Shown here one piece after another: positions 23 to 31,606 of a DNA stretch of 31,606 bases. The number at the start of each line of letters is the position of its first letter. Positions within the stretch are counted from its first letter, which is position 1. The notes under the pieces are model-generated. The model had not been told where the DNA came from. It worked only from the letters and a program-made list of their open reading frames with translations, and did no database searches. The position numbers were made by a program, and so were the translations under genes. Origin of the DNA: Macrostomum lignano (taxonomy: Eukaryota); contig NIVC01001562.1 in assembly GCA_002269645.1 (NCBI GenBank), positions 1-31,606 on the forward strand, written 5' to 3'.

Positions 23-274
23 GACACTGCAACCACCTCACTCACCTGGCCGCAGCCAGCTGTACACTGCAACCACCTCACTCCCTGACCAGCCAGCTAG
101 CCGTACACTGCAACCACCTCACTCCCTGGCCCAGCTAGCCGTACACTGCAACCACCTCACTCCCTGGCCCAGCCAGCCTGTACACTGCAACCACCTCACT
201 CCCTGGCCCAGCCAGCTGTGCACTGCAACCACCTCACTCCTCTGGCCGCAGCCAGCTGTACTGCAACCACCTCC
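23..274. repeat. Minisatellite, about 36-40-bp unit (ctgtacactgcaaccacctcactccctggcccagccag), about 7 copies
   Basis: tacactgcaaccacctcactcc recurs at about 38-bp spacing from 23 to 274, with small indels in the ccagc part. Confidence 0.9.
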
Positions 275-2371: not shown

Positions 2372-5300
2372 CTACGCCAAGTTGTCGTGGCTCTTTGAGA
2401 AGCGCACAGGAAAGCTCGGACTGCGGCCAATTTTTGGCAAATTGTTAATCAGCTTGAATAGGTCGGCGAACTGCGGCCGTTGGGTCTTCTCGAAGGTCCA
2501 ACACTTGAGCACGATTTCCTGTATTTGGTTGGGGTTTTGATTAATGTGTTTTAATGCACTTCTTGGGCGTTTTGATTATGCGCGGACAATGATGAGACTC
2601 ACCTTGTAGTTGGACGGCAGGCCGATGTCTCCAAGGCTCTGCATGATGCCATTGCCAGCTTTCCAGATGATTGCTTCGACAGCCAGGCGTTTGTAGGGCC
2701 ACTGCTTGGTCATCAGCTCGTACCATAGGGTGCTGAAGTTACCAGGGATTAGTAACAACTGTTTGTTCCCGTCTAATTGCTGTGCTGACTAATCGAATCA
2801 TCAGATCTAATTACTTGGGAAACCTGATCTATACACCTGGGTAACCTGATCTATATCACCCCGGTAACCTGATCTATACACCTGGGTAACCTGATCTATA
2901 TCACCCCGGTAACCTGATCTATACACTTGGATAACCTGATCTATACGCATGGATAACCTGAACTATACTAATGGATAACCTGATCTATACTCATGGATAA
3001 CCTGATCTATACTCCTGGATAACCTGATCTATACTCATGGATAACCTGATCTATACACTTGGATAACATGATCTATACTCATGGATAACATGATCTATAC
3101 ACTTGGATAACCTGATCTATACACCTGGGTAACCTGATCTATACACTTGGATAACCTGATCTATACTCCTGGATAACCTGATCTATACTCCTGGATAACC
3201 TGATCTATACTCCTGGATAACCTGATCTATACTCCTGGATAACCTGATCTATACTCTTGGATAACCTGATCTATACTCCTGGATAACCTGATCTATACTC
3301 ATGGATAACCTGATCTATACTCCTGGATAACCTGATCTATACTCCTGGATAACCTGATCTATACTCCTGGATAACCTGATCTATACTCATGGATAACCTG
3401 ATCTATACTCATGGATAACCTGATCTATACTCCTGGGTAACTTAGATCCATATACTTGGATAATCCATCTAATAAGTTAGAGAAACTATCTACTCACATC
3501 CGTTACATGGTTGACTCATCTTATGACTCAGTAACACACTGACCCATATAATCACCTGACTGACCTAGTAACACACTGGCTGACCCTGTAACAGTGCTAT
3601 CAATCGCTTACCCAAACGCGAACACGTCAGTCTCCTTAGAGAAGTGCATGGTCTTCATGCCGCCCTGCAGACAGCGCAGCAGCTCCGGTGCCAGGTAGCA
3701 GAGCCAGCCAGGTGGCACCTGCAGACAGGCCGGGCCTTTGCGAGTTGCCTCGGCCATTCGAGTCCAATTAAACAGCGCATAGTCCGTGATTACAGCTTTC
3801 ACGGCATTGTTAGACATGAACTCGATGAATACATTCTTGGAACGCAGATCGGCGTGCACAATGTCCCTGGCGTGCAGGTAGCCCATGCCCTGCACAATCT
3901 GCTGGGCCACCGCTACGCACCTGGTGACAGTGAACCTTGCCTGACTTGTTGGCTGTTCCCGCAGCTCATGGTACAGACTGTGGCCTTTGCACAGAGCCGT
4001 TACAATGCACAGATTCTTGGGATCCAGACAGGCGCCAAGGAACAGGGCCAGATTCTCGTGCCGGGTCAGGGCGGCCTTCTTAACGTCCAGCTTGAAGGTC
4101 TGCAGGACGGCCCGGCCGGCCTCTTCGTCGAACTCGGCCGAGGCGGTGTCGCGCGGTTTGCGCAGAAATTTCACCGCCACCTCGCCGTGCCACTGGCCGC
4201 GATGTACGCTGCAGAAATTGCCGGTTCCCAGCAGCTCCCGGATCACCAGCTCGTCGAAGGGGATCTCCCATTTCTTCACTAGATCGCCCGCCGCTGTACC
4301 GTCGGTATAGTCGCCGGACACCTCCGGCCCGAAGCTGCTGCTCCAGCTCTCTTCGTCCGGCATGATCTGAATCTTCGCAGGGGCGCCGCCGCCACCGCCG
4401 CCGCCGCTGCCGCCGAACTTGGGCGGGAAAGTGAAAACGAACCCGCCGCCTCCACCTCCTTTAGTCACGGAAGGAGGCGCCTGCGGAGAGTGGCCGCCTC
4501 CGCCGCCGCTGCCGCCGCCGCCTCCGCCAGCCAGCTGGCTTGGCGAGCGCGGCGTCGACGGCGTGTTCGACGAGCTGGGATTCGAGCTCGAATCGGCGCC
4601 CCCACGAGCGACGCCGGCAGAGGCCGCTGCTGCGGCGGCGGCTGCGGCTGCAGCAGTCGAGGACGTAACAACGATATCCCGCTGGCCCCTGGGATCCTTG
4701 GCCAGGTGATAGCTGCAGGCTCCTGCGTTGCTGGTGCAGCGCTTGTGGCACCGCTTGTTGCAGTGGACGCACCGGCGCAAATGGTTGAGAATTCGCTCGG
4801 AGCAGACGCAGCACTTGGCGCCAATGTTAAACAGCTTATTGGTGTCCCATTTGTGGCCGTAGGCGACGCCAGCCGACTCACCGACAACCTGCTGCTCGGG
4901 AAAATCCGACGTCGATTTCCTCTGCCTATGCTGTGCGCTTCGGCTAACATAGTTCTGAATGTTGGACTCAACTGAGGAGCTGCGAGTCATAGGCGCCGGA
5001 TAGTTGGTGTGCACTATGTTGAACGGCGGCAGGCGCGGGCTGGCTGGCGGCGGAGTGCCGCTCAGCGACCTGTTTGCCTGCTGCGGCCCAGCTGGGCCTG
5101 GCGTGGCCGGCAGCGAGCCGCTGTTCACTGACGCCGACGTGGAGACGCCGCCCTCGGGACTGCGGCGCAATGGCGAGTCGACAGCGTTGGCGCGGACGCT
5201 GCCGCCGCCGCCAGTTGAATCGGCGCCAGCGCCGAATGCCAACAGCGAGGCGGCAGCGACGGAATCTGCTTCAGCTGAGCCACCACTGGTGCCGGTGCCG

Positions 5301-6750
5301 CCGCCGCCGCCACTGCCAATGCCTGCGCCAACGTCCGAGTCATCTGGTGTGCCTTCCATTAGCTGGTCGGCCTGAGGCGGAGTGGCGGGACTGGTTGAGC
5401 AGGGACTGGCCACGGAAGGATAGGCGACTTCAACTAGAGTGTCTGGCGCCTCAAGGAACTGGTGATAGTACTGCTGCACAAGCTGATAGCAGCGGACGCA
5501 GCGTTCAACTGTGGTCTCGGGCGTGTGCAACTCGGCCAGCAGCTCCAGCAGGCGCGGCTTCTCTAGCCGGACTAGCTCGAGCAGGGTCCAGTTCCGGACC
5601 ACCTGTGCGGGTGCGCGGTTTGGTGACGATGGCTTTGCGACTAGAGTGATTAGCATGAATGGCGTTAGTGATCAGAAATGAGTGAACTGAGTGACTATTC
5701 TGAGTGACCCGAGTGACTAGTATGGCTCACCCGAGTGACCAGTATGACTGACCCGAGTGACCAGTATGACTGACCCGAGTGACCAGTATGACTGACCCGT
5801 GTGACCAGTATGACTGACCCGAGTGACCAGTATGACTGACCCGAGTGACCAGTATGACTGACCCGAGTGACCAGTATGATTGACCAGAGTGACCAGTATG
5901 ACTGACCCGAGTGACCAGTATGATTGACCAGAGTGACAAGTATGACTGACCCGAGTGACCAGTATGACTGACCCGAGTGACCAGTATGATTGACCAGAGT
6001 GACCAGTATGACTGACCCGAGTGACCAGTATGATTGACCAGAGTGACCAGTATGACTGACCCGTGTGACCAGTATGACTGACCCGAGTGACCAGTATGAT
6101 TGACCAGAGTGACCAGTATGACTGACCCGAGTGACCAGTATGATTGACCAGAGTGACCAGTATGACTGACCCGAGTGACCAGTATGACTGACCCGAGTGA
6201 CCAGTATGATTGACCAGAGTGACCAGTATGATTGACCCGAGTGACCAGTATGATTGACCAGAGTGACCAGTATGACTGACCCGTGTGACCAGTATGACTG
6301 ACCCGAGTGACCAGTATGACTGACCCGAGTGACCAGTATGATTGACCAGAGTGACCAGTATGACTGACCAGAGTGACCAGTATGAGTGACACTAATCAGG
6401 TATAAAACACAAACCTGCAGCACCGCTCGCTCCTCCAATTCAACAACGTGCATCAGCCACTGGTCAGTCTTCGGTATAGCGCAGGACTGGCGCACCTCGG
6501 CGGCCTCCTCCGGCGGCATCCGGCTCAGGGCGCACAGTTGATCGGCGTAGAATGCGCACAGCTTGGCCTCGGCCTGCTGACACTCGGCGGGCGGGGCCCG
6601 GGCCTGGCCCATCTGCGAGCAGAGCCGGCGCAGCGGGATCAGCTCTTTGTCAACTGTCAGGTTAATCAAATTCTGCACGTGCCGGCAATGTGTGGCTAAC
6701 GGCTTCGCGGCCTCGACAACCGCGGTGCCTGACTGGTCCGTGGCTGACAT
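2372..6750 (-). CDS. ksr: Kinase suppressor of Ras (KSR) scaffold/pseudokinase, 867 aa; CDS = join(6415..6750, 3612..5602, 2603..2732, 2372..2518) on the minus strand
   Basis: All three introns are GT-AG and phase-consistent (CAG|gtttgt..cacag|GTG; GG|gtaagc..ttcag|C; AAG|gtgagt..tacag|GAA). The total is 2604 nt = 867 aa + TAG. The N-terminus (HCRHVQNLINL..LRRLC..EAKLCAFYADQL..DQWL..WTLLELVRL) aligns by eye to the KSR-specific CC-SAM/CA1 domain. Also present: C1 zinc finger (H..CCVC..CVHCNKRCHKRC..C), S/T-P-rich region with FTFP (FxFP ERK-docking motif), RAF-family kinase fold (WEIPFDEL, GEVAVK, TRHENL, HADLRSKNVF, YLAPE, DVFAFGTLWYEL, CWTFEKTQRPQF) and a C-terminal RSPSFP 14-3-3-type motif. 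Confidence 0.93.
2812..3452. repeat. 22-bp minisatellite (ggataacctgatctatactcct) in KSR intron 2, about 29 copies
   Basis: Direct tandem repeat with variant units (cacctgggtaac, tactcatgg, tacacttgg) inside intron 2733-3611. Confidence 0.95.
5680..6392. repeat. 22-bp minisatellite (gagtgaccagtatgactgaccc) in KSR intron 1, about 32 copies
   Basis: Direct tandem repeat. The 22-aa periodicity of ORFs 5695-6750 and 5727-6392 equals 3 x 22 nt. It fills most of intron 5603-6414. Confidence 0.95.
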
Positions 6751-8048: not shown

Positions 8049-9780
8049 TATAAAGAAGTAACATGCTGCAATTAAACAAGTGGTAATCGCCTCTGCCACA
8101 TATCAAATGCAATCATTGATTATGTGATGAAAAAATGATATTTTTATTTTATTTGGTGCACTTCTCCATGAAATTGGTCTCCCAAAAATTACACAATTGT
8201 ACATCACCATTACAGATAGCCTTCTAGCTGATTGAAAATGACTTAATTCTTAAATATATTTTTAGGTTTGAAGATATCCTATAAGCAACAATTAGTTCCC
8301 ATTTGCATTTAAATATTAGTTAAAGATAGACAAACCTAGACTTTATTACCATCAATATAATATTTCAAAATGAATGACTATAACAATATCCTATTGTTAG
8401 AACAGGCTTTGTCTATTGAAATAACTTTGTCTATTAAATAATAAGTTTTCTAGTTGGTAATTGCAATATAACTATAAATGGTCAATTTGCTAATAGAAGC
8501 TATATATATTTACCTCTTTAAAGGGTGCACTAATGGTTCACTATTTTCTAGTCTCAAGGTCACTAATAACTTCACTAGTAGGCCCTTTTCCCTTGTTATG
8601 TGAGCTAGTCATATGACAAGCCTTGCTTTCTTGGGACCCAAAGTGCAGTGAATTCCTCACTGTGCAATTGGTCTATGTTTATAGTAGAAATCACATACTC
8701 TAAGACCCTTGCCTTCTCTAAGGCAAACCTTAGCATCAGTTGCTAAAATTAGCAATAGCATCACACAATCTGGCACAAAGGGGTCTTGCATGCAATGGTG
8801 CAATAGTTTCTTACCTATAAATACAAACCCTCTTGAGCCTTGTTTCCATCAAATATTTTTAGCCCTATTGTCTCTCTAGTAAACACCAGTTTCTCAGTTC
8901 TGTGATTGCCCAATTTCTTCAATTGTCCAGACCTTGTTCTCATCCTAAACCCAGACCTCTGAGTCTGCTCTGAGGCTAATACTATCTTCCCTACCAACCC
9001 ACTAAGCCCAGTAGGATCTGCTAATTATTAGTCTAAAATTGTAAATCTGCCTAAAGTGCCATGTTTACTTATCTTTAAAAATAAAAAATAAAAGTAGATG
9101 CATACCTAGTATGCATTTTATAGAATCATGTAAAAGGTTTAGTGTTAAGTAGACAAAAGATTGAAAAATTCAAATGTAAGTTCAAGTATAAATTTCAAGC
9201 CTTCCAATTTTAGGCTTATAAAAAGGCATTTTTACAAATGTTTATGCATGTCAATTTTCTGCTAGAAATAGTATAGGCAATAAAAATAAATAATCAACCA
9301 AAAAGGTTCCTTCCTTTATAACACAAAAAGGTCATTTATTCTCAACATTGGCCTAGATTTGAGAGTGTGGGTGTGCACTCAATTTTTTTGGCATGCATTT
9401 GTAACTAGTTCATTTATGTTTGAGTATATACCTAGCATGATCTAGATTTTGGACTATGGCATTAGGGGTCAAACAAGATCTTAATCTTAATCCTGACTTT
9501 TTAAAATCTCAATCTTGGTTTTAAGATCTTGAAAAAAGTCAAGATTTGTGATTATGTGACTAGTGGTACTACCACAATATTACCATATATTAAATATACA
9601 TCGCGTTATTAACAAGCTCAATATTATTTAATAACTAGCAATCTTTGCCCCCCGATGGGGGACATCTGGATAGAATCTCTGTTCTCTACAAGTAACAAAA
9701 AAACAGCCAAAAATCCTTCAAAAAGACAACAGGCAAACTGCTCAAATGAAGTGCATTGCAAAAAGAAATCATCCCAAGAC

Positions 9781-10405
9781 CGCAAGCATCCCCCAGATAG
9801 CAAGCATCCCCAAGATAGCAAGCATCCCCCAGATAGCAAGCATCCCCAAGATAGCAAGCATCCCCCAGATAGCAAGCCTCCCCCAGATAGCAAGCATCCC
9901 CCAGATAGCAAGCATCCCCAAGATAGCAAGCATCCCCCAGATAGCAAGCATCCCCAAGATAGCAAGCATCCCCCAGATAGCAAGCGTCCCCCAGATAGCA
10001 AGCATCCCCCAGATAGCAAGCATCCCTCAGATAGCAAGCATCCCCCAGATTGCAAGCATTCCCTAGATAGCAAGCATCCCCCGGATAGCAAGCATCCCCC
10101 AGAAAGCAAGCATCCCCTAGATAGCAAGAATCCCTTAGATAGCAAGCATCCCCCAGATAGCAAGCATCCCTCAGATAGCAAGCATCCCCCAGATAGCAAG
10201 CATCCCCCAGATAGCAAGCATCCCTCAGATAGCAAGCATCCCCCAGATAGCAAGCATCCCCCAGATAGCAAGCATCCCCCAGATAGCAAGCATCCCCCAG
10301 ATAGCAGGCATCCCCCAGATAGCAAGCATCCCCCAGATAGCAAGCATCCCCCAGATAGCAAGCATCCCCAAGATAGATAGCATCCCCAAATAGTAAGCAT
10401 CCACC
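9781..10405. repeat. 18-bp minisatellite (cccagatagcaagcatcc), about 33 copies, near the Helitron 3' end
   Basis: Direct tandem repeat that produces the DSKHPP / GGCLLS / LGDACY pseudo-ORFs. Shorter variant arrays (cccagatagcaagcaccc, about 4-5 units) lie at about 14028-14160, 17556-17688 and 19268-19400. Confidence 0.95.
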
Positions 10406-13400
10406 AGACAATAAGTAGCTAGTGCGACAATTTCCTTAGCATTATAGCGGCTCCTTTAAAATTCGCTTACTTTTACGTTTGAAATTGTGTATCTTTTATG
10501 TTTAACAGGGTGGCTCTTTTATGTTATACATTGTGGCTCCTTTATGTTATACATTGTGGCTCTTTTTTGTTCTACGCTCGTACATGGTAACTCTTTTATG
10601 TTTGATACGGTGGCTTTTCAATGTCTGACATGGTGGCTCTTCTATGTTTGACATGGGGGCTCTTCTATGTTTGACATGGGGCTCTTCTATGTTTGACAAA
10701 GTGGCTTTTTAATGTTTGACATGGTGGCTCTATTATGTTTGACATGGTGGCTCTATTATGTTTGACATGGTGGCTCTTTAATGTTCAAAAAGGTGGCTCT
10801 TTTATGTTTGACATGGTGGCTCTTTAATGTTTGACATGGTGGCTCTTTAATGTTGGACATGGTGGCTTTTTAATGTTAGACATGGTGGCTCTTTAATGTT
10901 CGACATAAAGTCACTTATATGTTTGACATTGTGGCTCTTTAATGTTTGACATGGTAGCTCTTTTATGTTCGACATGGTGGCTCTTTTATGTTCGACATGG
11001 TGTCGCTTCAATGTTTGACATGGAGTTACGTATATGTTTTACATGGTGGCTCTTTTATGTTCGACATGGTGGCTCTTTAATGTTTGACATGGGGTCTCTT
11101 CAATGTTTGACATGGAGTTACGTATATGTTTGACATGGTGGCTCTTTAATGTTTTACATGGTGGCACTTTCATGTCTGACCTGGTGGCTCTTTAATATTT
11201 GAAATGGTAGCTCTTTTATGTTTGACATGGTGGCTCTTTTATCTTTGACATGGTGGCTCTGTAATGTTCGACATGAAGTCATGTATATGTTTGACATGGT
11301 GGCTCTTAAATGTTCGACATAGTGGCTCTATAATGTTTGACATGGTGGCTCTTCAATGTTTGACCTGGTGGCTCTTTAATGTTTGACATAGTGTATCTTT
11401 AATGTTTGACATTGATTCATGTATATGTTTGACATGGTAGCTCTTGAATGTTCAACATGGAGTCATGTATATGTTTGACATGGTGGCTCTTAAATGTTCG
11501 ACATGGTGGCTCTTTAATGTTTGACATAGTGTCTTTTTAATGTTTGACATGGAGTCATGTATATGTTTGACATGGTGGCTCTTTAATGTTAGACATGGTG
11601 GCTCTTTTATGTTTTGCATGGTGGCTCTTTTATGTTCGACATGGTGTCTCTTCAATGTTTGACATGGCGTCATGTATATGTTTGACATGGATGCTCTTGT
11701 ATTTTTAACATGTTGACTCTTTAATGTTCGAAATGGTGGCTCTTAATTGTCTAACATGGAGTCACGTATATGTTTGACATGGAGTCATGCATATGCCTGA
11801 TATGGTAGCTCTTTAATGTTTTACATGGAGTCAGGTATATGTTTCACATGTTGGCTATTTTATGTTTGACATGGTGGTTCTTAAATGTTCGACAAGGTGG
11901 CTCTTTAATGTTTTACATGGTGGCACTTTCATGTTTGACCTGGTGGCTCTTTAATGTTTGACATGGTGGCTCTTTAATATTTGACATGGTGGCCCTTTTA
12001 TGTTCGACATGGTGGCTCTTCAATGTTTGACATGGAGTCATGTATATGTTTGACCTGGTGGCTCTTTAATGTTTGACATGGTGGCTCTTTAATGTTTTAC
12101 ATGGTGGCACTTTCATGTTTGACCTGGTGGCTCTTTAATGTTTGACATGGTGGCTCTTTAATATTTGACATGGTGGCCCTTTTATGTTCGACATGGTGGC
12201 TCTTCAATGTTTGACATGGAGTCATGTATATGTTTGACCTGGTGGCTCTTTAATGTTTGACATGGTGGCTCTTTAATGTTTTACATGGTGGCACTTTCAT
12301 GTTTGACTTGGTGGCTCTTTAATGTTCGACATGGTCGCTCTTTAATGTTCGACATGGTGGCCCTTTAATGTTCGACATGGTGTCGCTTCAATGTTTGACA
12401 TGGAGTTACGTATATGTTTTACATGGTGGCTCTTTTATGTTCGACATGGCGTCATGTATATGTTTGACATGGTAGCTCTTGAATGTTCAACATGGAGTCA
12501 TGTATATGTTTGACATGGTAGCTCTTGAATGTTCAACATGGAGTCATGTATATGTTTGACATGGTGGCTCTTAAATGTTCGACATGGTGGCTCTTTAATG
12601 TTTGACATGGAGTCATGTATATGTTTGGCATGGTAGCTCTTGAATGTTCGACATAGAGTCATGTATATGTTTGCCATGGTGGCTCTTTAATTTTAGACAT
12701 GGTGGCTCTTTTATGTTTTGCATGGTGGCTCTTTTATGTTCGACATGGTGTCTCTTTAATGTTTGACATGGAGTCATGTATATGTTTAACATGGTGGCTC
12801 TTGTATTTTTAACATGTTGGCTCTTTAATGTTCGACATGGTGGCTCTTTAATGTTTGACATGGAGTCCCGTATATGTTTGACATGGAGTCATGTATATGT
12901 CTGATATGGTAGCTCTTTAATGTTTTACATGGAGTCACGTATATGTTTCACATGGTGGCTATTTTATGTTTGACATGGTGGTTCTTAAATGTTCGACATG
13001 GTGGCTCTTTAATGTGTTACATGGTGGCACTTTCATGTTTGACCTGGTGGCTCTTTAATGTTTGACATAGTGTCTCTTTAATGTTTGACATTGATTCATG
13101 TATATGTTTGACATGGTAGCTCTTGAATGTTCGACATAGAGTCATGTATATGTTTGCCATGGTGGCTCTTTAATGTTAGACATGGTGGCAATTTCATGTT
13201 TGACCTGGTGGCTCTTTAATATTTGACATGGTGGCCCTTTAATATTTGACATGGTGGCCCTTTAATGTTCGACATGGTGGCTCTTCAATGTTCGACATGG
13301 AGTCATGTATATGTTTGACCTGGTTGCTCTTTAATGTTTGACATGGTGGCTCTTTAATGTTCGACATGGTGGCTCTTTTAGGTTTGAAATGGTGGCTCTT

Positions 13401-13781
13401 TAATGTTTGACATGGTGGCTTTTTAATGTTCGACATGGTGGCTCTTTTATGTTCGACATGGCGTCATGTATATGTTTGACATGGTAGCTCTTTAATGTTC
13501 AACATGGAGTCATGTATATGTTGGACATGGTGGCTCTTTAATGTTCGACATGGTGGCTCTTTAATGTTCGACATGGTGGCTCTTTAATGGTCGACATGGT
13601 GGCTCTTTAATGTTCGACATGGTAGCTCTTTAATGTTCGACATGGTGGCTCTTTAATGGTCGACATGGTGGCTCTTTAATGGTCGACATGGTGGCTCTTT
13701 AATGTTTGACATGGTGGCTCTTTAATGTTTGACATTGTGCTTTTTTGTGTTTAGCATTTTGTGTTTTTAAGGTTTTTGAAT

Positions 13782-13865
13782 AAAAAAATCTTTTTGCACT
13801 ACTAAGATTCGAACCCAGGTCGCAGCATTAGCAGTCCAGTCTGTTCGCATCTATGCTATCTCTTG
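13782..13865 (-). promoter_or_regulatory. tRNA-derived Pol III cassette, copy 1 (A box, B box, T7 terminator)
   Basis: The minus strand reads TAGCATAGATG (A box, 13858-13848) .. TGGACTGCTAAT .. CTGGGTTCGAATCTTAG (B box GGTTCGAATC 13815-13806 in a 5-bp T-stem) .. TTTTTTT (13788-13782). A-B spacing is tRNA-like. The acceptor and anticodon stems do not pair, so it is not a functional tRNA. Confidence 0.65.
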
Positions 13866-16800
13866 TCTTGAATTGTGGTTTGTGAATTGTGGACATCTGG
13901 ATAGAACTTCTGTTCTCTACAAGTAAAAAAACCCGGCCAAATAGAGTCTTCACAAAGACAACAGAAAAACTGCTCAAATGAAGCGCAATGCAAAAAAAAA
14001 CATCCCAAGACAGCAAACACCCCCTCCTCCCAGATAGCAAGCACCCCCAGATAGCAAGCACCCCCAGATAGCAAGCACCCCCAGATAGCAAGCACCCCCA
14101 GATAGCAAGCATCCAATTGATAGCAAGTATCTATCCTTAAATAGCAAGCATCCACCAGACAAAAAGAATATGGTGCAACATTTCCTTTTAGCTTTCTAAG
14201 GGCTCCTTTATGATTGGCATGACGCTTCTTATTACGTTTGAAAATGTCTCTCCTGTGTTTGAAATGGTGGCTATTTTATGTTCTACATGGTGGCTCTTTA
14301 ATGTTTGACAATTTATGTTTGTGCCAGTTTTATGTTTGTCATGGTGGCTCCTTAATGTTAGAAACGGTGGCTCTTTAATGTTTGACATGGAGTCACATAT
14401 ATGTTTCACATGGTGGCTCTTCTATGTCTAACTTGGTAGCTCTTTTATGTTTGACATCGTGGCTCGTTAATGTTCGACATCGTGGCTCTTTAACGTTCGA
14501 CATAGTGGCTCTTTAATGTTCGACATGGTGGCTCTTTAATGTTCGACATGGTGGCTCTTTACTGTTTGACAATGTGGCTCTTTAATGTTTGACATGGAGT
14601 CATGTATATGTCTGATATGGTAGCTGTTTAATGTTTTACATGGAGTCACGTATATGTTTCACATGGTGGCTATTTTATGTTTGACATGGTGGTTCTTAAA
14701 TGTTCGACATGGTGGCTCTTTAATGTGTTACATGGTGGCACTTTCATGTTTGACCTGGTGGCTCTTTAATGTTTGACATAGTGTCTCTTTAATGTTTGAC
14801 ATTGATTCATGTATATGTTTGACATGGTAGCTCTTGAATGTTCGACATAGAGTCATGTATATGTTTGCCATGGTGGCTCTTTAATGTTAGACATGGTGGC
14901 AATTTCATGTTTGACCTGGTGGCTCTTTAATATTTGACATGGTGGCCCTTTAATATTTGACATGGTGGCCCTTTAATGTTCGACATGGTGGCTCTTCAAT
15001 GTTTGACATGGAGTCATGTATATGTTTGACCTGGTGGCTCTTTAATGTTTGACATGGTGGCTCTTTAATGTTTTACATGGTGGCACTTTCATGTTTGACT
15101 TGGTGGCTCTTTAATGTTCGACATGGTCGCTCTTTAATGTTCGACATGGTGGCCCTTTAATGTTCGACATGGTGTCGCTTCAATGTTTGACATGGAGTTA
15201 CGTATATGTTTTACATGGTGGCTCTTTTATGTTCGACATGGCGTCATGTATATGTTTGACATGGTAGCTCTTGAATGTTCAACATGGAGTCATGTATATG
15301 TTTGACATGGTAGCTCTTGAATGTTCAACATGGAGTCATGTATATGTTTGACATGGTGGCTCTTAAATGTTCGACATGTTGGCTATTTTATGTTTGACAT
15401 GGTGGTTCTTAAATGTTCGACAAGGTGGCTCTTTAATGTTTTACATGGTGGCACTTTCATGTTTGACCTGGTGGCTCTTTAATGTTTGACATGGTGGCTC
15501 TTTAATATTTGACATGGTGGCCCTTTTATGTTCGACATGGTGGCTCTTCAATGTTTGACATGGAGTCATGTATATGTTTGACCTGGTGGCTCTTTAATGT
15601 TTGACATGGTGGCTCTTTAATGTTTTACATGGTGGCACTTTCATGTTTGACCTGGTGGCTCTTTAATGTTTGACATGGTGGCTCTTTAATATTTGACATG
15701 GTGGCCCTTTTATGTTCGACATGGTGGCTCTTCAATGTTTGACATGGAGTCATGTATATGTTTGACCTGGTGGCTCTTTAATGTTTGACATGGTGGCTCT
15801 TTAATGTTTTACATGGTGGCACTTTCATGTTTGACTTGGTGGCTCTTTAATGTTCGACATGGTCGCTCTTTAATGTTCGACATGGTGGCCCTTTAATGTT
15901 CGACATGGTGTCGCTTCAATGTTTGACATGGAGTTACGTATATGTTTTACATGGTGGCTCTTTTATGTTCGACATGGCGTCATGTATATGTTTGACATGG
16001 TAGCTCTTGAATGTTCAACATGGAGTCATGTATATGTTTGACATGGTAGCTCTTGAATGTTCAACATGGAGTCATGTATATGTTTGACATGGTGGCTCTT
16101 AAATGTTCGACATGGTGGCTCTTTAATGATTGACATGGAGTCATGTATATGTTTGACATGGTAGCTCTTGAATGTTCGACATAGAGTCATGTATATGTTT
16201 GCCATGGTGGCTCTTTAATTTTAGACATGGTGGCTCTTTTATGTTTTGCATGGTGGCTCTTTTATGTTCGACATGGTGTCTCTTTAATGTTTGACATGGA
16301 GTCATGTATATGTTTAACATGGTGGCTCTTGTATTTTTAACATGTTGGCTCTTTAATGTTCGACATGGTGGCTCTTTAATGTTTGACATGGAGTCACGTA
16401 TATGTTTGACATGGAGTCATGTATATGTCTGATATGGTAGCTCTTTAATGTTTTACATGGAGTCACGTATATGTTTCACATGGTGGCTATTTTATGTTTG
16501 ACATGGTGGTTCTTAAATGTTCGACATGGTGGCTCTTTAATGTGTTACATGGTGGCACTTTCATGTTTGACCTGGTGGCTCTTTAATGTTTGACATAGTG
16601 TCTCTTTAATGTTTGACATTGATTCATGTATATGTTTGACATGGTAGCTCTTGAATGTTCGACATAGAGTCATGTATATGTTTGCCATGGTGGCTCTTTA
16701 ATGTTAGACATGGTGGCAATTTCATGTTTGACCTGGTGGCTCTTTAATATTTGACATGGTGGCCCTTTAATATTTGACATGGTGGCCCTTTAATGTTCGA

Positions 16801-17309
16801 CATGGTGGCTCTTCAATGTTCAACATGGAGTCATGTATATGTTTGACCTGGTTGCTCTTTAATGTTTGACATGGTGGCTCTTTAATGTTCGACATGGTGG
16901 CTCTTTTAGGTTTGAAATGGTGGCTCTTTAATGTTTGATATGGTGGCTTTTTAATGTTCGACATGGTGGCTCTTTTATGTTCGACATGGCGTCATGTATA
17001 TGTTTGACATGGTAGCTCTTTAATGTTCAACATGGAGTCATGTATATGTTGGACATGGTGGCTCTTTAATGTTCGACATGGTGGCTCTTTAATGTTCGAC
17101 ATGGTGGCTCTTTAATGGTCGACATGGTGGCTCTTTAATGTTCGACATGGTAGCTCTTTAATGTTCGACATGGTGGCTCTTTAATGGTCGACATGGTGGC
17201 TCTTTAATGGTCGACATGGTGGCTCTTTAATGTTTGACATGGTGGCTCTTTAATGTTTGACATTGTGCTTTTTTGTGTTTAGCATTTTGTGTTTTTAAGG
17301 TTTTTGAAT

Positions 17310-17393
17310 AAAAAAATCTTTTTGCACTACTAAGATTCGAACCCAGGTCGCAGCATTAGCAGTCCAGTCTGTTCGCATCTATGCTATCTCTTG
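17310..17393 (-). promoter_or_regulatory. tRNA-derived Pol III cassette, copy 2
   Basis: Same sequence as copy 1, offset +3528 (gattcgaacc at 17334). Confidence 0.65.
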
Positions 17394-19020
17394 TCTTGAA
17401 TTGTGGTTTGTGAATTGTGGACATCTGGATAGAACTTCTGTTCTCTACAAGTAAAAAAACCCGGCCAAATAGAGTCTTCACAAAGACAACAGAAAAACTG
17501 CTCAAATGAAGCGCAATGCAAAAAAAACATCCCAAGACAGCAAACACCCCCCTCCTCCCAGATAGCAAGCACCCCCAGATAGCAAGCACCCCCAGATAGC
17601 AAGCACCCCCAGATAGCAAGCACCCCCAGATAGCAAGCATCCAATTGATAGCAAGTATCTATCCTTAAATAGCAAGCATCCACCAGACAAAAAGAATATG
17701 GTGCAACATTTCCTTTTAGCTTTCTAAGGGCTCCTTTATGATTGGCATGACGCTTCTTATTACGTTTGAAAATGTCTCTCCTGTGTTTGAAATGGTGGCT
17801 ATTTTATGTTCTACATGGTGGCTCTTTAATGTTTGACAATTTATGTTTGTGCCAGTTTTATGTTTGTCATGGTGGCTCCTTAATGTTAGAAACGGTGGCT
17901 CTTTAATGTTTGACATGGAGTCACATATATGTTTCACATGGTGGCTCTTCTATGTCTAACTTGGTAGCTCTTTTATGTTTGACATCGTGGCTCGTTAATG
18001 TTCGACATCGTGGCTCTTTAACGTTCGACATGGTGGCTCTTTAATGTTCGACATGGTGGCTCTTTAATGTTCGACATGGTGGCTCTTTACTGTTTGACAA
18101 TGTAGCTCTTTAATGTTTGACATGGAGTCATGTATATGTCTGATATGGTAGCTCTTTAATGTTTTACATGGAGTCACGTATATGTTTCACATGGTGGCTA
18201 TTTTATGTTTGACATGGTGGTTCTTAAATGTTCGACATGGTGGCTCTTTAATGTGTTACATGGTGGCACTTTCATGTTTGACCTGGTGGCTCTTTAATGT
18301 TTGACATAGTGTCTCTTTAATGTTTGACATTGATTCATGTATATGTTTGACATGGTAGCTCTTGAATGTTCGACATAGAGTCATGTATATGTTTGCCATG
18401 GTGGCTCTTTAATGTTAGACATGGTGGCAATTTCATGTTTGACCTGGTGGCTCTTTAATATTTGACATGGTGGCCCTTTAATATTTGACATGGTGGCCCT
18501 TTAATGTTCGACATGGTGGCTCTTCAATGTTCGACATGGAGTCATGTATATGTTTGACCTGGTTGCTCTTTAATGTTTGACATGGTGGCTCTTTAATGTT
18601 CGACATGGTGGCTCTTTTAGGTTTGAAATGGTGGCTCTTTAATGTTTGACATGGTGGCTTTTTAATGTTCGACATGGTGGCTCTTTTATGTTCGACATGG
18701 CGTCATGTATATGTTTGACATGGTAGCTCTTTAATGTTCAACATGGAGTCATGTATATGTTGGACATGGTGGCTCTTTAATGTTCGACATGGTGGCTCTT
18801 TAATGTTCGACATGGTGGCTCTTTAATGGTCGACATGGTGGCTCTTTAATGTTCGACATGGTAGCTCTTTAATGTTCGACATGGTGGCTCTTTAATGGTC
18901 GACATGGTGGCTCTTTAATGGTCGACATGGTGGCTCTTTAATGTTTGACATGGTGGCTCTTTAATGTTTGACATTGTGCTTTTTTGTGTTTAGCATTTTG
19001 TGTTTTTAAGGTTTTTGAAT

Positions 19021-19104
19021 AAAAAAATATTTTTGCACTACTAAGATTCGAACCCAGGTCGCAGCATTAGCAGTCCAGTCTGTTCGCATCTATGCTATCT
19101 CTTG
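19021..19104 (-). promoter_or_regulatory. tRNA-derived Pol III cassette, copy 3
   Basis: Same sequence as copy 2, offset +1711 (gattcgaacc at 19045), with one substitution next to the T-run. Confidence 0.65.
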
Positions 19105-22090
19105 TCTTGAATTGTGGTTTGTGAATTGTGGACATCTGGATAGAACTTCTGTTCTCTACAAGTAAAAAAACCCGGCCAAATAGAGTCTTCACAAAGACAA
19201 CAGAAAAACTGCTCAAATGAAGCGCAATGCAAAAAAAAACATCCCAAGACAGCAAACACCCCCCTCCTCCCAGATAGCAAGCACCCCCAGATAGCAAGCA
19301 CCCCCAGATAGCAAGCACCCCCAGATAGCAAGCACCCCCAGATAGCAAGCATCCAATTGATAGCAAGTATCTATCCTTAAATAGCAAGCATCCACCAGAC
19401 AAAAAGAATATGGTGCAACATTTCCTTTTAGCTTTCTAAGGGCTCCTTTATGATTGGCATGACGCTTCTTATTACGTTTGAAAATGTCTCTCCTGTGTTT
19501 GAAATGGTGGCTATTTTATGTTCTACATGGTGGCTCTTTAATGTTTGACAATTTATGTTTGTGCCAGTTTTATGTTTGTCATGGTGGCTCCTTAATGTTA
19601 GAAACGGTGGCTCTTTAATGTTTGACATGGAGTCACATATATGTTTCACATGGTGGCTCTTCTATGTCTAACTTGGTAGCTCTTTTATGTTTGACATCGT
19701 GGCTCGTTAATGTTCGACATCGTGGCTCTTTAACGTTCGACATAGTGGCTCTTTAATGTTCGACATGGTGGCTCTTTAATGTTCGACATGGTGGCTCTTT
19801 ACTGTTTGACAATGTGGCTCTTTAATGTTTGACATGGAGTCATGTATATGTCTGATATGGTAGCTGTTTAATGTTTTACATGGAGTCACGTATATGTTTC
19901 ACATGGTGGCTATTTTATGTTTGACATGGTGGTTCTTAAATGTTCGACATGGTGGCTCTTTAATGTGTTACATGGTGGCACTTTCATGTTTGACCTGGTG
20001 GCTCTTTAATGTTTGACATAGTGTCTCTTTAATGTTTGACATTGATTCATGTATATGTTTGACATGGTAGCTCTTGAATGTTCGACATAGAGTCATGTAT
20101 ATGTTTGCCATGGTGGCTCTTTAATGTTAGACATGGTGGCAATTTCATGTTTGACCTGGTGGCTCTTTAATATTTGACATGGTGGCCCTTTAATATTTGA
20201 CATGGTGGCCCTTTAATGTTCGAAATGGTGGCTCTTTAATGTTCGAAATGGTGGCTCTTTAATGTTCGACATGGTGGCTCTTTAATTTTCTTCATGGTAT
20301 AGCTCTTTTATGTTAGACATGGTGGCTCTTTAATGTTCGACATAGTGGCTCTTTAATGTTTTAAATTGTGGCTCTTTAATGTTTGTCATAAAGTCACATA
20401 TATGTTTGACATGGTGGCTCCTAAATGTTTTACATGGTGGCTCTTTATGTTTGACATGGTGGCTCCTAAATGTTTTACATGGTGGCTCTTTTTTTGTTCT
20501 ACATGGTAACTCTTTTATGTTTGATACGGTGGCTTTTTAATGTCTGACATGGTACGGCTCTTTAATGTTCTACATGGTGACCCTTTAATGTTCGACATGG
20601 TGGCTCTTTACTTTTAGACATGGTGGCTCTTTAATGTTCGATATGGTAGCACTTTATTGTTTGACATCATGCCAGATTTATGTTTGACATGGTGGCTCTT
20701 TTAGGTTTGACATGGTGGCTCTTTAATGTTAGACATGGAGGCTCTTTAATGTTCGACATGGTGGCTCTTTAATGTTTGACATGGTGGCTCTTTAATGTTA
20801 GACATGGTGGCTTTTTTATGTTTGACATGGTGGCTCTTCTATTTTTGACATGGTGGCTCTTTAATGTTTAACATGGTGGTTCTTTAATGTTCGACATGGT
20901 GGTTCTTTAATGTTTGACATGGTGGCTCTTTAATGTTCTACATGGTGGCCCTTTAATGTTCGACATGGTGGCTCTTTTAGGTTTGACATAATGGCTCTTT
21001 AATTTTTGACATGGTGGCTCTTTAATGTTCGATATGGTGGCTTTTTTATGTTAGACATGGTGGCTCTTTTAGGTTTGACATGGTGGCTCTTCTATGTTTG
21101 ACATGGTGGCTCTTAAATGGTTGCATGGTGGCTCTTAAATGTTTGACATGGTGGCTTTTAAATCTTTGACATGGTGGCTTCTAAATGTTTGGCATGGTGG
21201 CTCTTTTTTGTTCGATATGGTGGCTCTTTTTTGTTCTACACGGTAACTCTTTATGTTTGATACGGTGGCTTTTTAATGTCTGACATGTTGGCTCTTTTAA
21301 GTTTGACATGGCGCTCTTTAATGTTCGACAAAGTGGCTCTTTAATGTTTGACATGGTGGCTCTTAATTTTTTGACACGGTGGCTCTTTAATGTTCGAAAT
21401 GGTGGCTCTTTAATGTTCGACATGGTGGCTCTTTTATGTTAGACATGGTGGCTCTTTAATTTTTGACATAAAGTCACATATATGTTTGACATGGTGGCTC
21501 CTAAATGTTTGACATGGTTGCTCCTAAATGTTTGACATGGTGGCTCTTTAATGTTCAAAATGGTAGCTCTTTAATGTTCGAAATGGTGGCTCTTTAATGT
21601 TCGAAATGGTGGCTCTTTAATGTTCGACAAAGTGGCTCTTTAATGTTTGACATGGTGGCTCTTTAATGTTTGACATGGTGGCTCCTAAATGTTTGACATG
21701 GTGGCTCTTTAATGTTCGAAATGGTGGCTCTTTATTTTCGACATGGTGGCTCTTAAATGTTTGACATTGTGGCTCCTAAATGTTTGACATGGTGGCTCTT
21801 TAATGTTTAAAATGGTGGCTCTTTAATGTTCAAAATGGTAGCTCTTTAATGTTCGAAATGGTGGCTCTTTAATATTCGAAATGGTGGCTCTTTTATGTTC
21901 GAAATGGTGGCTCTTTAATCTTCGACATGGTGGCTCTTTAATGTTCGACGTGGTGGCTCTTTAATGTTTGACAAAGAGTCACATATATGTTTTACATGGT
22001 GCCCATGTAATGTTTGACATGGTGCCTCTTTTATGTTTGACATTGTGCTTTTTTATGTTTAGCAGTTTCGTGTTTTCAAAGTGTTTTAAT

Positions 22091-22174
22091 AAAAAAATTA
22101 TTTTTCACTACTAAGATTCGAACCCAGGTCGCTACGTTGGCAGTCCAGTCTGTTCGTATATAGGCTATCTCTTT
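22091..22174 (-). promoter_or_regulatory. tRNA-derived Pol III cassette, copy 4 (diverged)
   Basis: The B box GGTTCGAATC (plus strand gattcgaacc at 22115) and T7 are intact. The A box is weaker (TAGCCTATATA) and the loop reads CTGCCAA instead of CTGCTAA. Confidence 0.55.
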
Positions 22175-22693
22175 TCAATTGGAGAACATGAATTGTGGCC
22201 CTTAGGCCCCTTATAATTCAATTCTTACAGCAAGTCAATTAGAGTAAAAAGTTATGACATTATCAATATATCAGTCAGCCAGTACCAGTCTCATTTTAAG
22301 TTAGCAATATGGTTACGCAATTTAAATCAAGTCGTGTGTGCATTTCTTTGGCACTGTTTTCAACTTGTTGTGATGCAATCTTTATCAGAATCAGAATTCA
22401 GCCAGTCAGTTTTTTCTCTAGCATTTTTACAATGGGTTTTAAGTCGAAAATTTTGCTTGACCTTTGCAAAAAAGCATGTTTTTCGAATATTTAATCCCTT
22501 TAATATTGAGCAATTTCTTAGCCAAGATGCATGTACCATCCCAGGAAAATTTCTGATCGAATGGTGCAAGTTTGAAGAAAATCAGTTGAGCCATTTTTTC
22601 TGAAATCTATTGCATACTTACCTACCTACCCACATACAGACAACTCATTTTTAGTATATAGGATTTATTTTTTTCTTTTATTGACTATTATCA

Positions 22694-26361: not shown

Positions 26362-26582
26362 GAGCATGTACATCGAGGGGTAGATAAGATAGATAAGTTT
26401 GCGTGGTTGGGGTGAGTCTGGTGAAGAGCGCATGTACATCGAGGGGTAGATAAGATAGATAAGTTTGCGTGGTTGGGGTGAGTCTGGTGAAGAGCGCATG
26501 TACATCGAGGGGTAGATAAGATAGATAAGTTTGCGTGGTTGGGATGGGTCTGGTGAGGAGCGCATGTACATTGAGGGGTAGG
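26362..26582. repeat. 66-bp minisatellite, about 3.3 copies
   Basis: gagcgcatgtacatcgaggggtagataagatagataagtttgcgtggttggggtgagtctggtgaa is repeated in tandem, giving 22-aa periodicity in ORFs 26212-26571 and 26358-26627. Confidence 0.9.
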
Positions 26583-29620: not shown

Positions 29621-30169
29621 CTAAAAATTTGTGACAAAAACTTTGGTTGATACCGGTATATAACTATCAAAACTAATTTCGAAGTACTGATTTGTTATGC
29701 AAACCTTGTCACAAATTTACTTAGAGTATAAAGTAATATATAATTAAATTTTCAATATTTTAATGCATCAATCTTACTGTTAAATTGCTAAGGTATCTTA
29801 ATGACTGAATAAAAAAGTTTTCAAACAACAATGCAGTTTTGCTAAAACTGTTTAAACTTTTTTTTGAATTTGTAGTTATCAAACATGCAAATTACCTACT
29901 AACTAACCAACAAAGCTTTTATAACTATTAATAATTTAAATTTTAATAGTATTTTGTTATATTGTATAAATAAAGATAGGAAATGACCATAAAAAAATTA
30001 AAGCAAAAGTTCAAGAAAAAACTAGCATTTCTGCCAGTAATTAACAGTAGAAAGACCACGCTATTTTTCCCCATGAGGAAAGACCACCAGGTGTATTTGG
30101 TGCCTTGATAGAAGCACGATGTTGGCGGTGTCAGATCATTGGGCCGCGTGGTGGCACTCCGTTGAAGGT

Positions 30170-31606
30170 CCGAAGGTCGCCTGTATGTCTACAGGTCAAC
30201 CTAGAGGGACAAGAAGTCAAGTATTCACGTCTTCCGCTATGTGCGCCTTGTGTTTGGCCTGATCTCCAGTCCAGCAATCCTGCAAGAAGTTCTGTTTCAC
30301 CATTTCCGCACAATAACCAAGGCTTCCAAGACCGTTTGTCTGAAACTGTCTCAGGACACATACGTCGACAACCTAGTATCTGGCGCAGACTCCAAAGAGG
30401 AAGCTATGGCATTGTATCACATGACGCAGAGCGCGTTCCTGGAAGCATCGATGAATATATACGACTGGCTCTCAAAATGCTCAGCTCTGAACACCACTGC
30501 TCTTGAAGATGGATGTGGCGTGTCACATTCAACCAAATCACCAGTCAAGGTCCTTGGCAAGCAATGGATTCCGGATAGCAACATTCCATTTGCCGATTTG
30601 TGATCATCCAGCAATCGGCTTGTCCGGCAAACGTCTGACCAAGCATTCGACATTGTCAGCATTCTCCAAGATGTTTGACCCTCTTGGCCGTCTTTGCCCG
30701 TTGCTGACGCGAGCCAAACTGCTTTTTCAGCAGAGCTGCAAACTAAAGGTGCCGTGGGACGCTATGCTTCCGGAGCCCCTTCACTCGTAGTGGGTTGAAT
30801 GCTTAGCTGAGTTACGATGTTGGACGATGCCACTCGACCGAAGAGTCTTCAGACAGACGCCCATTGCATGCGAAATTCATGGTTCTGTGATGCATCTCAA
30901 TCGGCCTACGCAGTGTGTGTCTATTTATGGTCTACATTTGATTCAGGTGACGTCCAAGTTGCGCTACTGATGGGCAAAACATGCGTTGCGCCCATAGCTC
31001 CGACGACTATTCCACGGCTAGAGTTGATGGCTGCGAACGAGCTTGCTCAAGCCCTCAACGAATTCCGCGCTGAATATCTGCATGGCTTCATCACCTGCTG
31101 GAGCAACAGCATGGACGTTCTGTGGTGGCTCAAGTCGACACACAAATTGTGGAAGTCATTCATTTAAAACAGAGTTTCCAATGTTCGAGCAGCTGTGCAC
31201 CGAGAAGTGGCGGTTCTTCCCTGGGAGGACAACCCCGCCAACAGTGCGACCCGACCAGTTGTGCCAGGCGCATTCGATTCATTGTCCCTTGGTTTCGGGG
31301 TCCTGGGTGGCTGTCTCTGGATTCCTCACTCTGGCCGGAGCAACCTGTGATAGGCGACCAAAGCTCAAATCATCAAGAAGATGCACACAACTGCGCAGTC
31401 ACACAGACGTCGACGTCAGAGGTACAATCGGCACGCATCCACTCCATCATCGAGGTGCAGTGCATCAATTCCTTGACTAGATTGCTGCGTGTTTTCAGCT
31501 GGGTTCTCCATTCATCAGCATTTTAAAATGGACGTGGCAGGCTACGACTGTCGAGCTGACGCCGGCAGAGCTGTTAAAAGCGGAGGAGTTCTGGATTAAA
31601 TTGCTG
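30170..31606 (+). mobile_element. Degenerate BEL/Pao LTR-retrotransposon pol fragment (RT C-terminal half, connection, RNase H), running off the window end
   Basis: Pao-type motifs occur across shifting frames: FRYVRLVFGLISSPAIL, TYVDNL, KVLGKQW, TKHSTLSAFSKMFDPLGRLCP..AKLLFQ..WD, FCDASQSAYAVCVYL, KTCVAPIAPTTIPRLELMAA, WSNSMDVLWWL, NRV, WRFFPG, RLLRVFSWV. Multiple stops and frameshifts indicate a pseudogene. The left boundary is approximate. Confidence 0.9.

What the first reader, a model, noticed from the sequence alone, without database searches (positions are those of the whole stretch)
9635..22663. A 13-kb transposase-less Helitron acting as a satellite-DNA carrier between two Ras-pathway genes
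What looks like an 11.5-kb satellite block is bounded by exact Helitron termini: 5'-TC preceded by A, and hairpin + CTAG-3' followed by T. Near the 5' end is AAAATGGCTCAACTGATTTTCTTCAAACTTG (22597-22567), which from memory resembles a conserved subterminal motif of invertebrate non-autonomous Helitrons. The modular order on the element strand is 5' arm (about 480 bp), tRNA-derived Pol III cassette, 23-bp satellite, 18-bp minisatellite, 3' arm. Satellites as central repeats of Helitrons are known in bivalves and Drosophila. A single element with two satellites plus a Pol III unit, internally amplified four-fold to 13 kb, may be an undescribed family that seeds and spreads satellite arrays.
Basis: partly seen in the sequence, partly recalled or inferred. 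Interest (0 to 1): 0.8.

Follow-up and report, generated by a model that had tools for sequence, protein, structure and literature searches.

The report
Satellite-filled non-autonomous Helitron transposon
The 13-kb block between a Ras-like and a KSR-like gene is most likely a transposase-less rolling-circle transposon (Helitron) whose interior has expanded into about 440 copies of a 23-bp repeat; Helitrons filled with such repeats are already known in frogs, fish, worms, flies and oysters, so this is a new example, not a new kind.

Summary
On the minus strand, 9635-22663 starts A|TCCTATATACTAAAA and ends in a 19-nt palindrome, 11 nt and CTAG|T. The first 15 nt match the 5' end of the bat Helitron Helraiser at 14 of 15 positions. 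That match is unique in the window (0.01 expected). The hairpin-CTRR-T motif occurs three times in the window, once exactly at 9635. There are no terminal inverted repeats, no target duplication and no RepHel ORF. Inside are a 465-bp 5' arm, then four units of tRNA-like box, 23-bp satellite (about 440 monomers), 17/18-bp minisatellite and arm body. The three internal junctions are 99.2-99.5% identical recent copies of one junction. That junction is only about 83% identical to the terminal modules and lacks both termini. It therefore reflects in-place tandem duplication, not rolling-circle concatenation. The tRNA origin is unproven: the B box and box spacing fit, but no cloverleaf or Rfam/ARAGORN hit was found. 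No other copy was found in any reachable collection, so mobility, family membership and "satellite seeding" remain untested. Minisatellite-rich canonical Helitrons are already described. Verdict: a real, ordinary-to-moderately interesting new member of a known kind.

The parts
22649..22663 (-). Helitron 5' terminus (LTS end): A|TCCTATATACTAAAA
   Evidence: Read directly. It matches the Helraiser/Helibat1 LTS start TCCTATATAATAAAA at 14 of 15 positions (supplement of PMC4778049). It is the only such match in the window, with 0.01 expected.
22199..22663 (-).
   Evidence: It has no other copy in the window and no Pfam hit for its ORF. It is absent from the internal junctions.
22040..22198 (-). 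Terminal tRNA-like module: A-box-like TAGC, U33-GCC-A37 spacing, B box GGTTCGAATC at 22115-22124, T7 run at 22091-22097
   Evidence: The B box occurs only at the four module copies, with 0.31 expected. There is no tRNA call from ARAGORN or Rfam, and the fold is no better than shuffles.
19490..22039 (-). 23-bp satellite array 4 (element-strand monomer GAGCCACCATGTCAAACATTAAA). The part to the right of 20247 lies outside the recent duplications.
18971..19489 (-). Internal junction J3: tRNA-like', arm body', 17-bp minisatellite (19269-19351) and linker
17780..18970 (-). 23-bp satellite array 3
17260..17779 (-). Internal junction J2, with the 17-bp minisatellite at 17557-17639
14250..17259 (-). 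23-bp satellite array 2
13732..14249 (-). Internal junction J1, with the 17-bp minisatellite at 14029-14111. The join reads ...CCAGATGTCC|ACAATTCA... and lacks both the LTS and the CTAG.
   Evidence: It is about 83% identical to the terminal modules and 99.2-99.5% identical to J2 and J3.
10470..13731 (-). 23-bp satellite array 1
9782..10408 (-). 18-bp minisatellite (GCAAGCATCCCCCAGATA), 35 copies
   Evidence: sequence read.
9660..9781 (-). 3' arm body, shared with the internal junctions at about 83% identity
9635..9664 (-). Helitron 3' terminus (RTS): 19-nt palindrome TGTCCCCCATCGGGGGGCA (9646-9664), then 11 nt AAGATTGCTAG, followed by T
   Evidence: Sequence read. The motif scan is. The 5-bp GC core is predicted by the folds. 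Helraiser has the same geometry, a 19-bp palindrome 11 nt from the end.

Best explanation
This is a non-autonomous canonical Helitron (the A^T-inserting type with TC...CTAG ends) lying on the minus strand between the 3' end of a Ras-family gene and the 5' end of a KSR-like gene.

Shown:
- Its ends carry the sequence signals that a RepHel transposase uses: a 5' LTS end almost identical to that of Helibat1/Helraiser, and a 3' palindrome 11 nt before CTAG.
- Its cargo is non-coding: a tRNA-like box with its own T-run, a 23-bp tandem array, a 17/18-bp minisatellite and short unique arms.

Inferred:
- The element arrived by rolling-circle 'peel-and-paste' transposition, mobilised in trans by an autonomous partner elsewhere in the genome.
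- After insertion, or partly before it, the arrays grew by replication slippage and unequal exchange.
- An illegitimate join with CC microhomology linked the 5' arm of the 3' palindrome to a point 35 nt upstream of the tRNA-like box. This made a tandem dimer of the whole cargo.
- Much later, a roughly 2.1-kb segment spanning that junction was triplicated (periods 3528 and 1711/1712 bp, 99.2-99.5% identity). This brought the element from about 7.8 kb to 13.0 kb.
For: Termini:
- Both ends were read directly.
- The LTS 15-mer matches Helraiser at 14 of 15 positions and is unique in the window, with 0.01 expected.
- The RTS motif occurs 3 times in 63 kb of both strands, once exactly at the block edge and facing outward.
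- The palindrome and spacer geometry equal Helraiser's.
- The two ends are on one strand, in the right order, and enclose the whole repeat block.

Other element features:
- No inverted terminal or subterminal repeats and no flank duplication above chance.
- No RepHel or any other coding ORF inside.

Internal architecture:
- The LTS motif and the hairpin-CTRR-T motif are each absent from the interior of the block.

Published parallels:
- Canonical Helitrons consisting largely of minisatellites are known.
Against: - Only one copy was seen. No second copy, empty site or autonomous partner could be retrieved from any reachable collection.
- The predicted hairpin is weak. The DNA MFE shows only a 5-bp GC stem (z about -1.8). 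The 8-bp version needs a G.T pair.
- My 3' motif definition and the choice of Helraiser as comparator were made after seeing the sequence, so the chance estimates are optimistic.
- The roughly 17% divergence between terminal and internal modules is large for a purely local duplication. It could mean sequence was imported from another family member.
Confidence: 0.7

Rival explanations
1. This is an ordinary complex tandem-repeat locus: a higher-order satellite or minisatellite that arose in place. Its Helitron-like ends are coincidences in AT-rich intergenic DNA.
For: - The window is full of unrelated tandem arrays that lack any Helitron ends (searches find no further termini).
- The 465-bp 5' arm is single-copy, so the 5' boundary is not defined independently.
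- The hairpin is small.
- No other copy was found.
Against: - It needs two independent rare matches (0.01 and about 0.9 expected per window) to fall on the same strand, in the correct order, and within 25 bp and 465 bp of the block edges.
- The A and T flanking bases and the 19-nt/11-nt geometry also fit.
Confidence: 0.12
2. This is a composite locus. A Helitron, or two Helitron fragments, sits next to or around a pre-existing satellite array. The arrays were then never cargo and do not move with the ends.
For: - The terminal modules differ by about 17% from the internal ones.
- The arrays are far longer than those usually reported inside mobile Helitron/HINE copies. The longest Cg_HINE array has 29 monomers.
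Against: - The arm body and the tRNA-like module are contiguous with the termini and also recur next to every array.
- Array edges degenerate into arm and linker sequence, as expected for arrays born inside the element.
- There is no second LTS or RTS inside.
Confidence: 0.1
3. The amplified unit is a tRNA-derived, SINE-like or Pol III-driven element that multiplies in tandem. The Helitron ends would then be irrelevant.
For: - The B box GGTTCGAATC occurs only at the four modules.
- An A-box-like TAGC lies 43 nt upstream, a GCC sits at the anticodon position, and a T7 run follows.
Against: - No cloverleaf was found. ARAGORN finds it only at noise thresholds, there is no Rfam tRNA hit even at E<=10, and folding is no better than shuffles.
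- The T7 terminator sits between the box and the satellite, so a Pol III transcript could not include the rest of the unit.
- The three junctions are recent segmental copies, not independent insertions.
Confidence: 0.04
4. This is a Helentron-derived HINE (of the DINE-1 or Cg_HINE type), not a canonical Helitron.
For: HINEs typically carry central tandem repeats plus a microsatellite.
Against: - There are no subterminal inverted repeats.
- Insertion is between A and T, not T and T, and the 3' end is CTAG.
- The LTS is like that of Helibat1, a canonical Helitron.
Confidence: 0.03

Closest known systems
Helibat1 / Helraiser (bat canonical Helitron; PMC4778049)
   Same: - The 5' end TCCTATATA.TAAAA matches at 14 of 15 positions.
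- It has TC/CTAG ends and an A^T target.
- A 19-nt palindrome lies about 11 nt from the 3' end.
   Different: - The last 30 nt are only about 43% identical by my count, so it is not the same family by the 3'-end rule.
- The host is an invertebrate; the nearest KSR relatives are arthropod, at 45-49% identity.
- It has no coding capacity, and its interior is tandem repeats.
Minisatellite-rich canonical Helitrons: Heli2Xen / Helitron-N2_XT / Helitron-N1_DR (PMC12001565), and C. elegans Helitron1 / HelitronY1A with a 35-bp minisatellite (bioRxiv 10.64898/2026.08.08.743475)
   Same: Rolling-circle elements in which minisatellite arrays occupy most of the non-autonomous copies.
   Different: - Here there are two unrelated short-period arrays (23 bp and 17/18 bp) plus a tRNA-like box.
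- The array is about 10 kb in one copy.
- The cargo itself has been re-duplicated as a 1.7-3.5-kb higher-order unit.
Helentron-derived HINEs: Cg_HINE in Crassostrea gigas (PMC7492417) and DINE-1 / DINE-TR1 in Drosophila
   Same: They share the modular plan of left arm, short repeat, central satellite-like array and right arm with a palindrome. They are the published model for TE-borne satellite dispersal.
   Different: - Those elements have subTIRs and T-rich or TT targets, which were tested here and not found.
- Their monomers are 140-180 bp, in arrays of at most 29 copies.
Tandem Helitron arrays made by rolling-circle read-through (Pritham & Feschotte 2007; Xiong, Dooner & Du 2016, as cited in PMC7492417)
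   Same: Several element-length units lie head to tail, and the inner units lack the 3' end.
   Different: The inner units here also lack the 5' terminus and the 465-bp 5' arm, and there is no CTAG-TC junction. That points to illegitimate or unequal recombination, not failed termination.

Membership tests
Canonical Helitron (Helitron1-type) | 5' terminus begins with TC | tested here: met
   The minus strand reads TCCTATATAC... at 22663. The first 15 nt match the Helraiser LTS at 14 of 15 positions.
Canonical Helitron (Helitron1-type) | 3' terminus ends in CTRR | tested here: met
   CTAG at 9635-9638 on the minus strand.
Canonical Helitron (Helitron1-type) | 16-20-nt palindrome about 10-12 nt upstream of the 3' end | tested here: met
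   TGTCCCCCATCGGGGGGCA is 19 nt (8 bp including one G.T) and lies 11 nt from the end. Only the 5-bp GC core appears in the MFE folds, with z about -1.8, so this is met in form but the hairpin is weak.
Canonical Helitron (Helitron1-type) | Insertion between host A and T, with no target-site duplication | tested here: met
   The flanking bases are A (5') and T (3'). Flank-to-flank matches are at chance level only. A true empty site could not be examined.
Canonical Helitron (Helitron1-type) | No terminal inverted repeats | tested here: met
   The inverted-repeat scan found no pairing between the element ends.
Canonical Helitron (Helitron1-type) | Multiple dispersed copies sharing both ends, and an autonomous RepHel partner | not testable with these tools
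   The source genome is not in any reachable collection.
Helibat1 family specifically | At least 80% identity over the last 30 nt (the 3'-end family rule proposed for maize Helitrons, mentioned in PMC6544945; the threshold itself is from my own knowledge) | tested here: not met
   The last 30 nt here are about 43% identical to the Helraiser RTS ...GTGCACGAATTTTCGTGCACGGGCCACTAG.
Helentron / HINE | Subterminal inverted repeats and a T^T insertion site | tested here: not met
   No subTIRs; the target is A^T.
tRNA gene or tRNA-derived SINE head | Cloverleaf recognisable by tRNA models | tested here: not met
   ARAGORN finds 0 genes at thresholds down to 85% of default. Rfam gives no tRNA hit at gathering score or at E<=10. 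Folding is no better than shuffles.
tRNA gene or tRNA-derived SINE head | Internal Pol III promoter (A and B boxes at tRNA spacing) followed by a T-run | tested here: inconclusive
   The B box GGTTCGAATC is exact and specific to the modules. The A box matches only TRGCNNA. The 43-nt spacing, GCC at positions 34-36 and the T7 run were read. Transcription was not tested.
Classical satellite DNA | Long homogeneous tandem arrays that are abundant genome-wide | tested here: inconclusive
   The local array holds about 444 monomers at 23 bp. Genome-wide abundance cannot be tested here.

The most novel reading that the evidence does not exclude
This copy may represent an undescribed invertebrate Helitron family with Helibat1-like ends whose standard cargo is a TFIIIC/Pol III B-box module plus two seed repeats. 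It would have been caught at the moment of turning from a transposon into a satellite: the cargo unit itself (tRNA-like box, 23-mer array, minisatellite, arm) has begun to amplify as a 1.7-3.5-kb higher-order repeat in gene-rich DNA. If other copies carry short versions of the same arrays, the family would be a demonstrable disperser of satellite seeds. The B-box modules that punctuate the arrays could then act as chromatin boundaries.
Probability: 0.15. Interest if true: 0.55.

Novelty: new member of a known kind. Interest (0 to 1): 0.35.

Why it matters
If the element belongs to a multi-copy family, it would add a canonical (A^T, TC...CTAG) Helitron from an under-sampled invertebrate lineage to the short list of transposons shown to carry and scatter satellite seeds. 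This copy would record the successive steps: short internal repeat, then kb-scale array, then higher-order duplication of the whole cargo.

In practical terms, it explains a 13-kb repeat block lying 2.9 kb upstream of a KSR-like gene. It also warns annotators that the minisatellite yields spurious 240-260-aa ORFs.

On present evidence it confirms an already published principle and does not open a new one.

Tried and rejected
Searches for other copies (all empty or uninformative):
- Exact-protein look-ups of window ORFs found nothing.
- Homology searches with the 5'-arm ORF and the 3'-arm/terminus ORF found nothing.
- Metagenome scan with the 27-nt 3' terminus: 0 hits.
- Metagenome scan with the commonest satellite 20-mer: 4 hits, all a single match in an unrelated conserved gene with no tandem repeat.
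- Viral scans with the satellite and the LTS: 0 hits.
- Prokaryotic genome scan with a two-monomer pattern: 0 hits.

Host identity:
- A KSR search gave only 45-49% identical arthropod relatives, so the species stays unknown.

Ideas tested and rejected:
- A 10-nt 'actagtggta' match in both flanks is at chance level.
- The tRNA identity was tested with ARAGORN at default and relaxed thresholds, Rfam at gathering and E<=10, and RNA folding. All were negative or at noise level.
- A rolling-circle concatemer origin for the internal junctions is rejected, because there is no internal LTS or CTAG-TC joint.
- Helentron/HINE membership is rejected.
- My first greedy monomer tiling lost register and was discarded in favour of local-maximum picking.


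Full report
**Observation**

The block is real and sits at the stated coordinates.
- The + strand reads ...aatattatttaataa|ctagcaatctttgccccccgatgggggacatctgg... at 9634/9635.
- The + strand reads ...tttttagtatatagga|tttatttttttc... at 22663/22664.
- On the minus strand the unit therefore begins A|TCCTATATACTAAAAATGAG and ends ...TGTCCCCCATCGGGGGGCAAAGATTGCTAG|T.
- The quoted 31-mer lies at 22567-22597 on the minus strand.
- TRF finds an 18-bp array at 9782-10408 (35 copies, 92% matches) and a 23/46/69-bp array spanning 10470-22060.
- A period scan shows three non-satellite interruptions.
- About 444 monomers are at least 60% identical to the 23-mer consensus, and 317 are at least 80% identical.

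**Architecture**

Self-BLAST and alignments give this order on the element (minus) strand:
- a 5' arm, 22663-22199, 465 bp and single-copy;
- then four units, each made of a tRNA-like module, the 23-bp satellite, a linker, a 17/18-bp minisatellite and an arm body;
- then the terminal palindrome and CTAG.

The three internal junctions read ...arm body'...CCAGATGTCC|ACAATTCACAAACCACAATTCAAGACAAGAGATAGC...(tRNA-like').
- They join a point inside the 5' arm of the 3' palindrome (+9660) to a point 35 nt upstream of the tRNA-like box (+22198).
- The join has CC microhomology.
- They contain neither the LTS nor a CTAG-TC joint.
- The LTS motif occurs only once in the window.
- They are therefore not rolling-circle head-to-tail concatemers.

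**Timing of the duplications**

Exact-word and diagonal analysis gives:
- 11839-15074 matches 15367-18602 (offset 3528, 99.2-99.5% identity);
- 16399-18535 matches 18110-20247 (offset 1711/1712, 99.2-99.3% identity);
- 12871-15004 matches 18110-20244 (99.5% identity).

The three junctions are thus very recent copies of a single junction. That junction's arm body and tRNA-like module are only about 83% identical to the terminal arm body (9660-9781) and the terminal tRNA-like module (22040-22198). The history is therefore an old cargo dimer of about 7.8 kb, followed by a recent triplication of a roughly 2.1-kb junction-bearing segment to reach 13.0 kb. 'Four-fold amplification' is correct as a count but hides these two very different ages.

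**Are the ends Helitron ends?**

Three independent tests support it.
1. I defined a 3' motif as a GC-rich stem of at least 5 bp, a 3-6-nt loop, a 4-15-nt spacer, then CTRR and T. It occurs 3 times on both strands of the window (0.89 expected from Markov simulations). Two are in the 60-65% GC coding region. The third is exactly at 9635, facing outward.
2. The palindrome extends to 19 nt (TGTCCCCC-ATC-GGGGGGCA, 8 bp with one G.T) and is followed by 11 nt. That is the geometry reported for Helraiser: 'a 19-bp-long palindromic sequence ... [quoted passage not shown]
3. The Helraiser/Helibat1 LTS starts TCCTATATAATAAAAGAG (supplement of PMC4778049). The element here starts TCCTATATACTAAAAATGAG, which is 14 of 15 identical. 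That 15-mer with at most 1 mismatch occurs once in the window, at 22649-22663, with 0.01 expected.

Both ends lie on the same strand, in 5'-to-3' order, and enclose the whole block. There are no terminal or subterminal inverted repeats. Flank similarity is at chance level only. There is no RepHel or other genuine ORF inside.

Caveats:
- The thermodynamic hairpin is modest. Only the 5-bp core is predicted, with z about -1.8, against z -4.2 for Helraiser's.
- The motif definitions were chosen after seeing the sequence.

**The tRNA-like module**

In favour:
- The B box GGTTCGAATC occurs only at the four modules (0.31 expected).
- TAGC lies 43 nt upstream.
- T-GCC-A sits where U33, the anticodon and A37 would be.
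- A T7 run follows 12-15 nt after the box.

Against:
- ARAGORN finds nothing at thresholds down to 85% of default, and only noise-level calls at 75%.
- Rfam gives no tRNA match at gathering score or at E<=10 on either version.
- Folding is no better than shuffles.

I regard derivation from a tRNA (pseudo)gene, captured with its terminator, as plausible but unproven. Because the T7 run precedes the satellite, a Pol III transcript from this box would not include the array.

**Genomic context**

- 3608-5656 (-) encodes a KSR-like kinase. Pfam gives PK_Tyr_Ser-Thr at 7.6e-27. The best relatives are named kinase suppressor of Ras 2 and come from arthropods, at 45-49% identity.
- An upstream coding segment starts at ATG 6750.
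- 28018-28332 (-) is a Ras-family exon (8.2e-22).
- A terminal exon ends ...[11 protein letters not shown] at 27301.

The element is therefore intergenic. It lies 4.6 kb downstream of the Ras stop codon and 2.9 kb upstream of the KSR start codon, in the same orientation as both genes.

**Other copies**

None could be obtained. The source genome is evidently absent from the protein and contig collections:
- no homologue above 49% identity for KSR;
- nothing for the arm ORFs;
- the DNA scans were empty or irrelevant.

Mobility, copy number, the empty site and the autonomous partner therefore remain untested.

**Comparison with known systems**

- The termini place the element with canonical Helitrons. 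It is not a Helentron/HINE, which would have subTIRs and a T^T target; both were tested and not met.
- It is not a member of the Helibat1 family by the 3'-end rule, because the last 30 nt are about 43% identical.
- Helitrons whose non-autonomous copies are mostly minisatellite are published for Xenopus and zebrafish (Heli2Xen, Helitron-N2_XT, Helitron-N1_DR) and for C. elegans (35-bp minisatellite of Helitron1/HelitronY1A).
- Helentron-borne satellites are well documented in oysters and Drosophila.

What is unusual here:
- the scale, about 10 kb of array in one copy, against at most 29 monomers in Cg_HINE;
- two unrelated short-period arrays plus a B-box module;
- re-duplication of the cargo as a higher-order unit.

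**Verdict**

This is a real feature, and the Helitron reading is well supported by intrinsic evidence (confidence about 0.7). It is a new member of a known kind. The 'satellite seeding and spreading' claim and the Pol III cassette remain hypotheses. Interest is moderate to low (0.35).

Noticed in passing
window 2821-3463 and 5678-6390: Two unrelated 22-bp tandem arrays (29 and 32 copies, 91-92% matches) lie in and around the KSR-like gene. The second lies between two coding segments and is read through by a spurious 351-aa ORF. Neither has Helitron-like ends, so kb-scale short-period arrays also arise in this genome without Helitrons.
   Followed up: partly
window 28615-29418: A 34-bp tandem array (24 copies, 90% matches) lies just upstream (on the gene strand) of the Ras-family exon at 28018-28332, probably in an intron.
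   Followed up: no
window 30105-31526 (+): A fragment of a BEL/Pao LTR retrotransposon pol gene, split over several frames. Pfam gives Peptidase_A17 at 4.7e-18 and a weak RVT_1 hit.
   Followed up: partly
window 3608-5656 (-): The KSR-like exon is about 60-65% GC with poly-Ala and poly-Gly runs, set in 30-35% GC non-coding DNA. Its closest database relatives are only 45-49% identical (arthropods), so the host belongs to a poorly sampled lineage.
   Followed up: partly
window 10470-22060 (-): On the element strand, every 23-bp monomer (GAGCCACCATGTCAAACATTAAA) contains a perfect Kozak-like GCCACCATG. This generates many short MSNIKEPP... ORFs. It is probably meaningless, but it explains why literature hits to this 13-mer were cloning primers.
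   Followed up: no
window 9624-10411: The 18-bp (6-codon) minisatellite is open in several frames on both strands and yields 241-258-aa repeat ORFs (DSKHPP, GGCLLS and LGDACY repeats). Gene callers could mistake these for proteins.
   Followed up: no
window 24-273, 26364-26581, 27497-27683: Further short tandem arrays (38 bp x6, 66 bp x3.3, 21 bp x9) show that the whole window is unusually rich in minisatellites.
   Followed up: no
window 27301-27440 (-): The likely last exon of the Ras-family gene ends in a polybasic stretch and the CAAX box CSLL. This fixes the gene's 3' end and shows that the Helitron is intergenic.
   Followed up: partly
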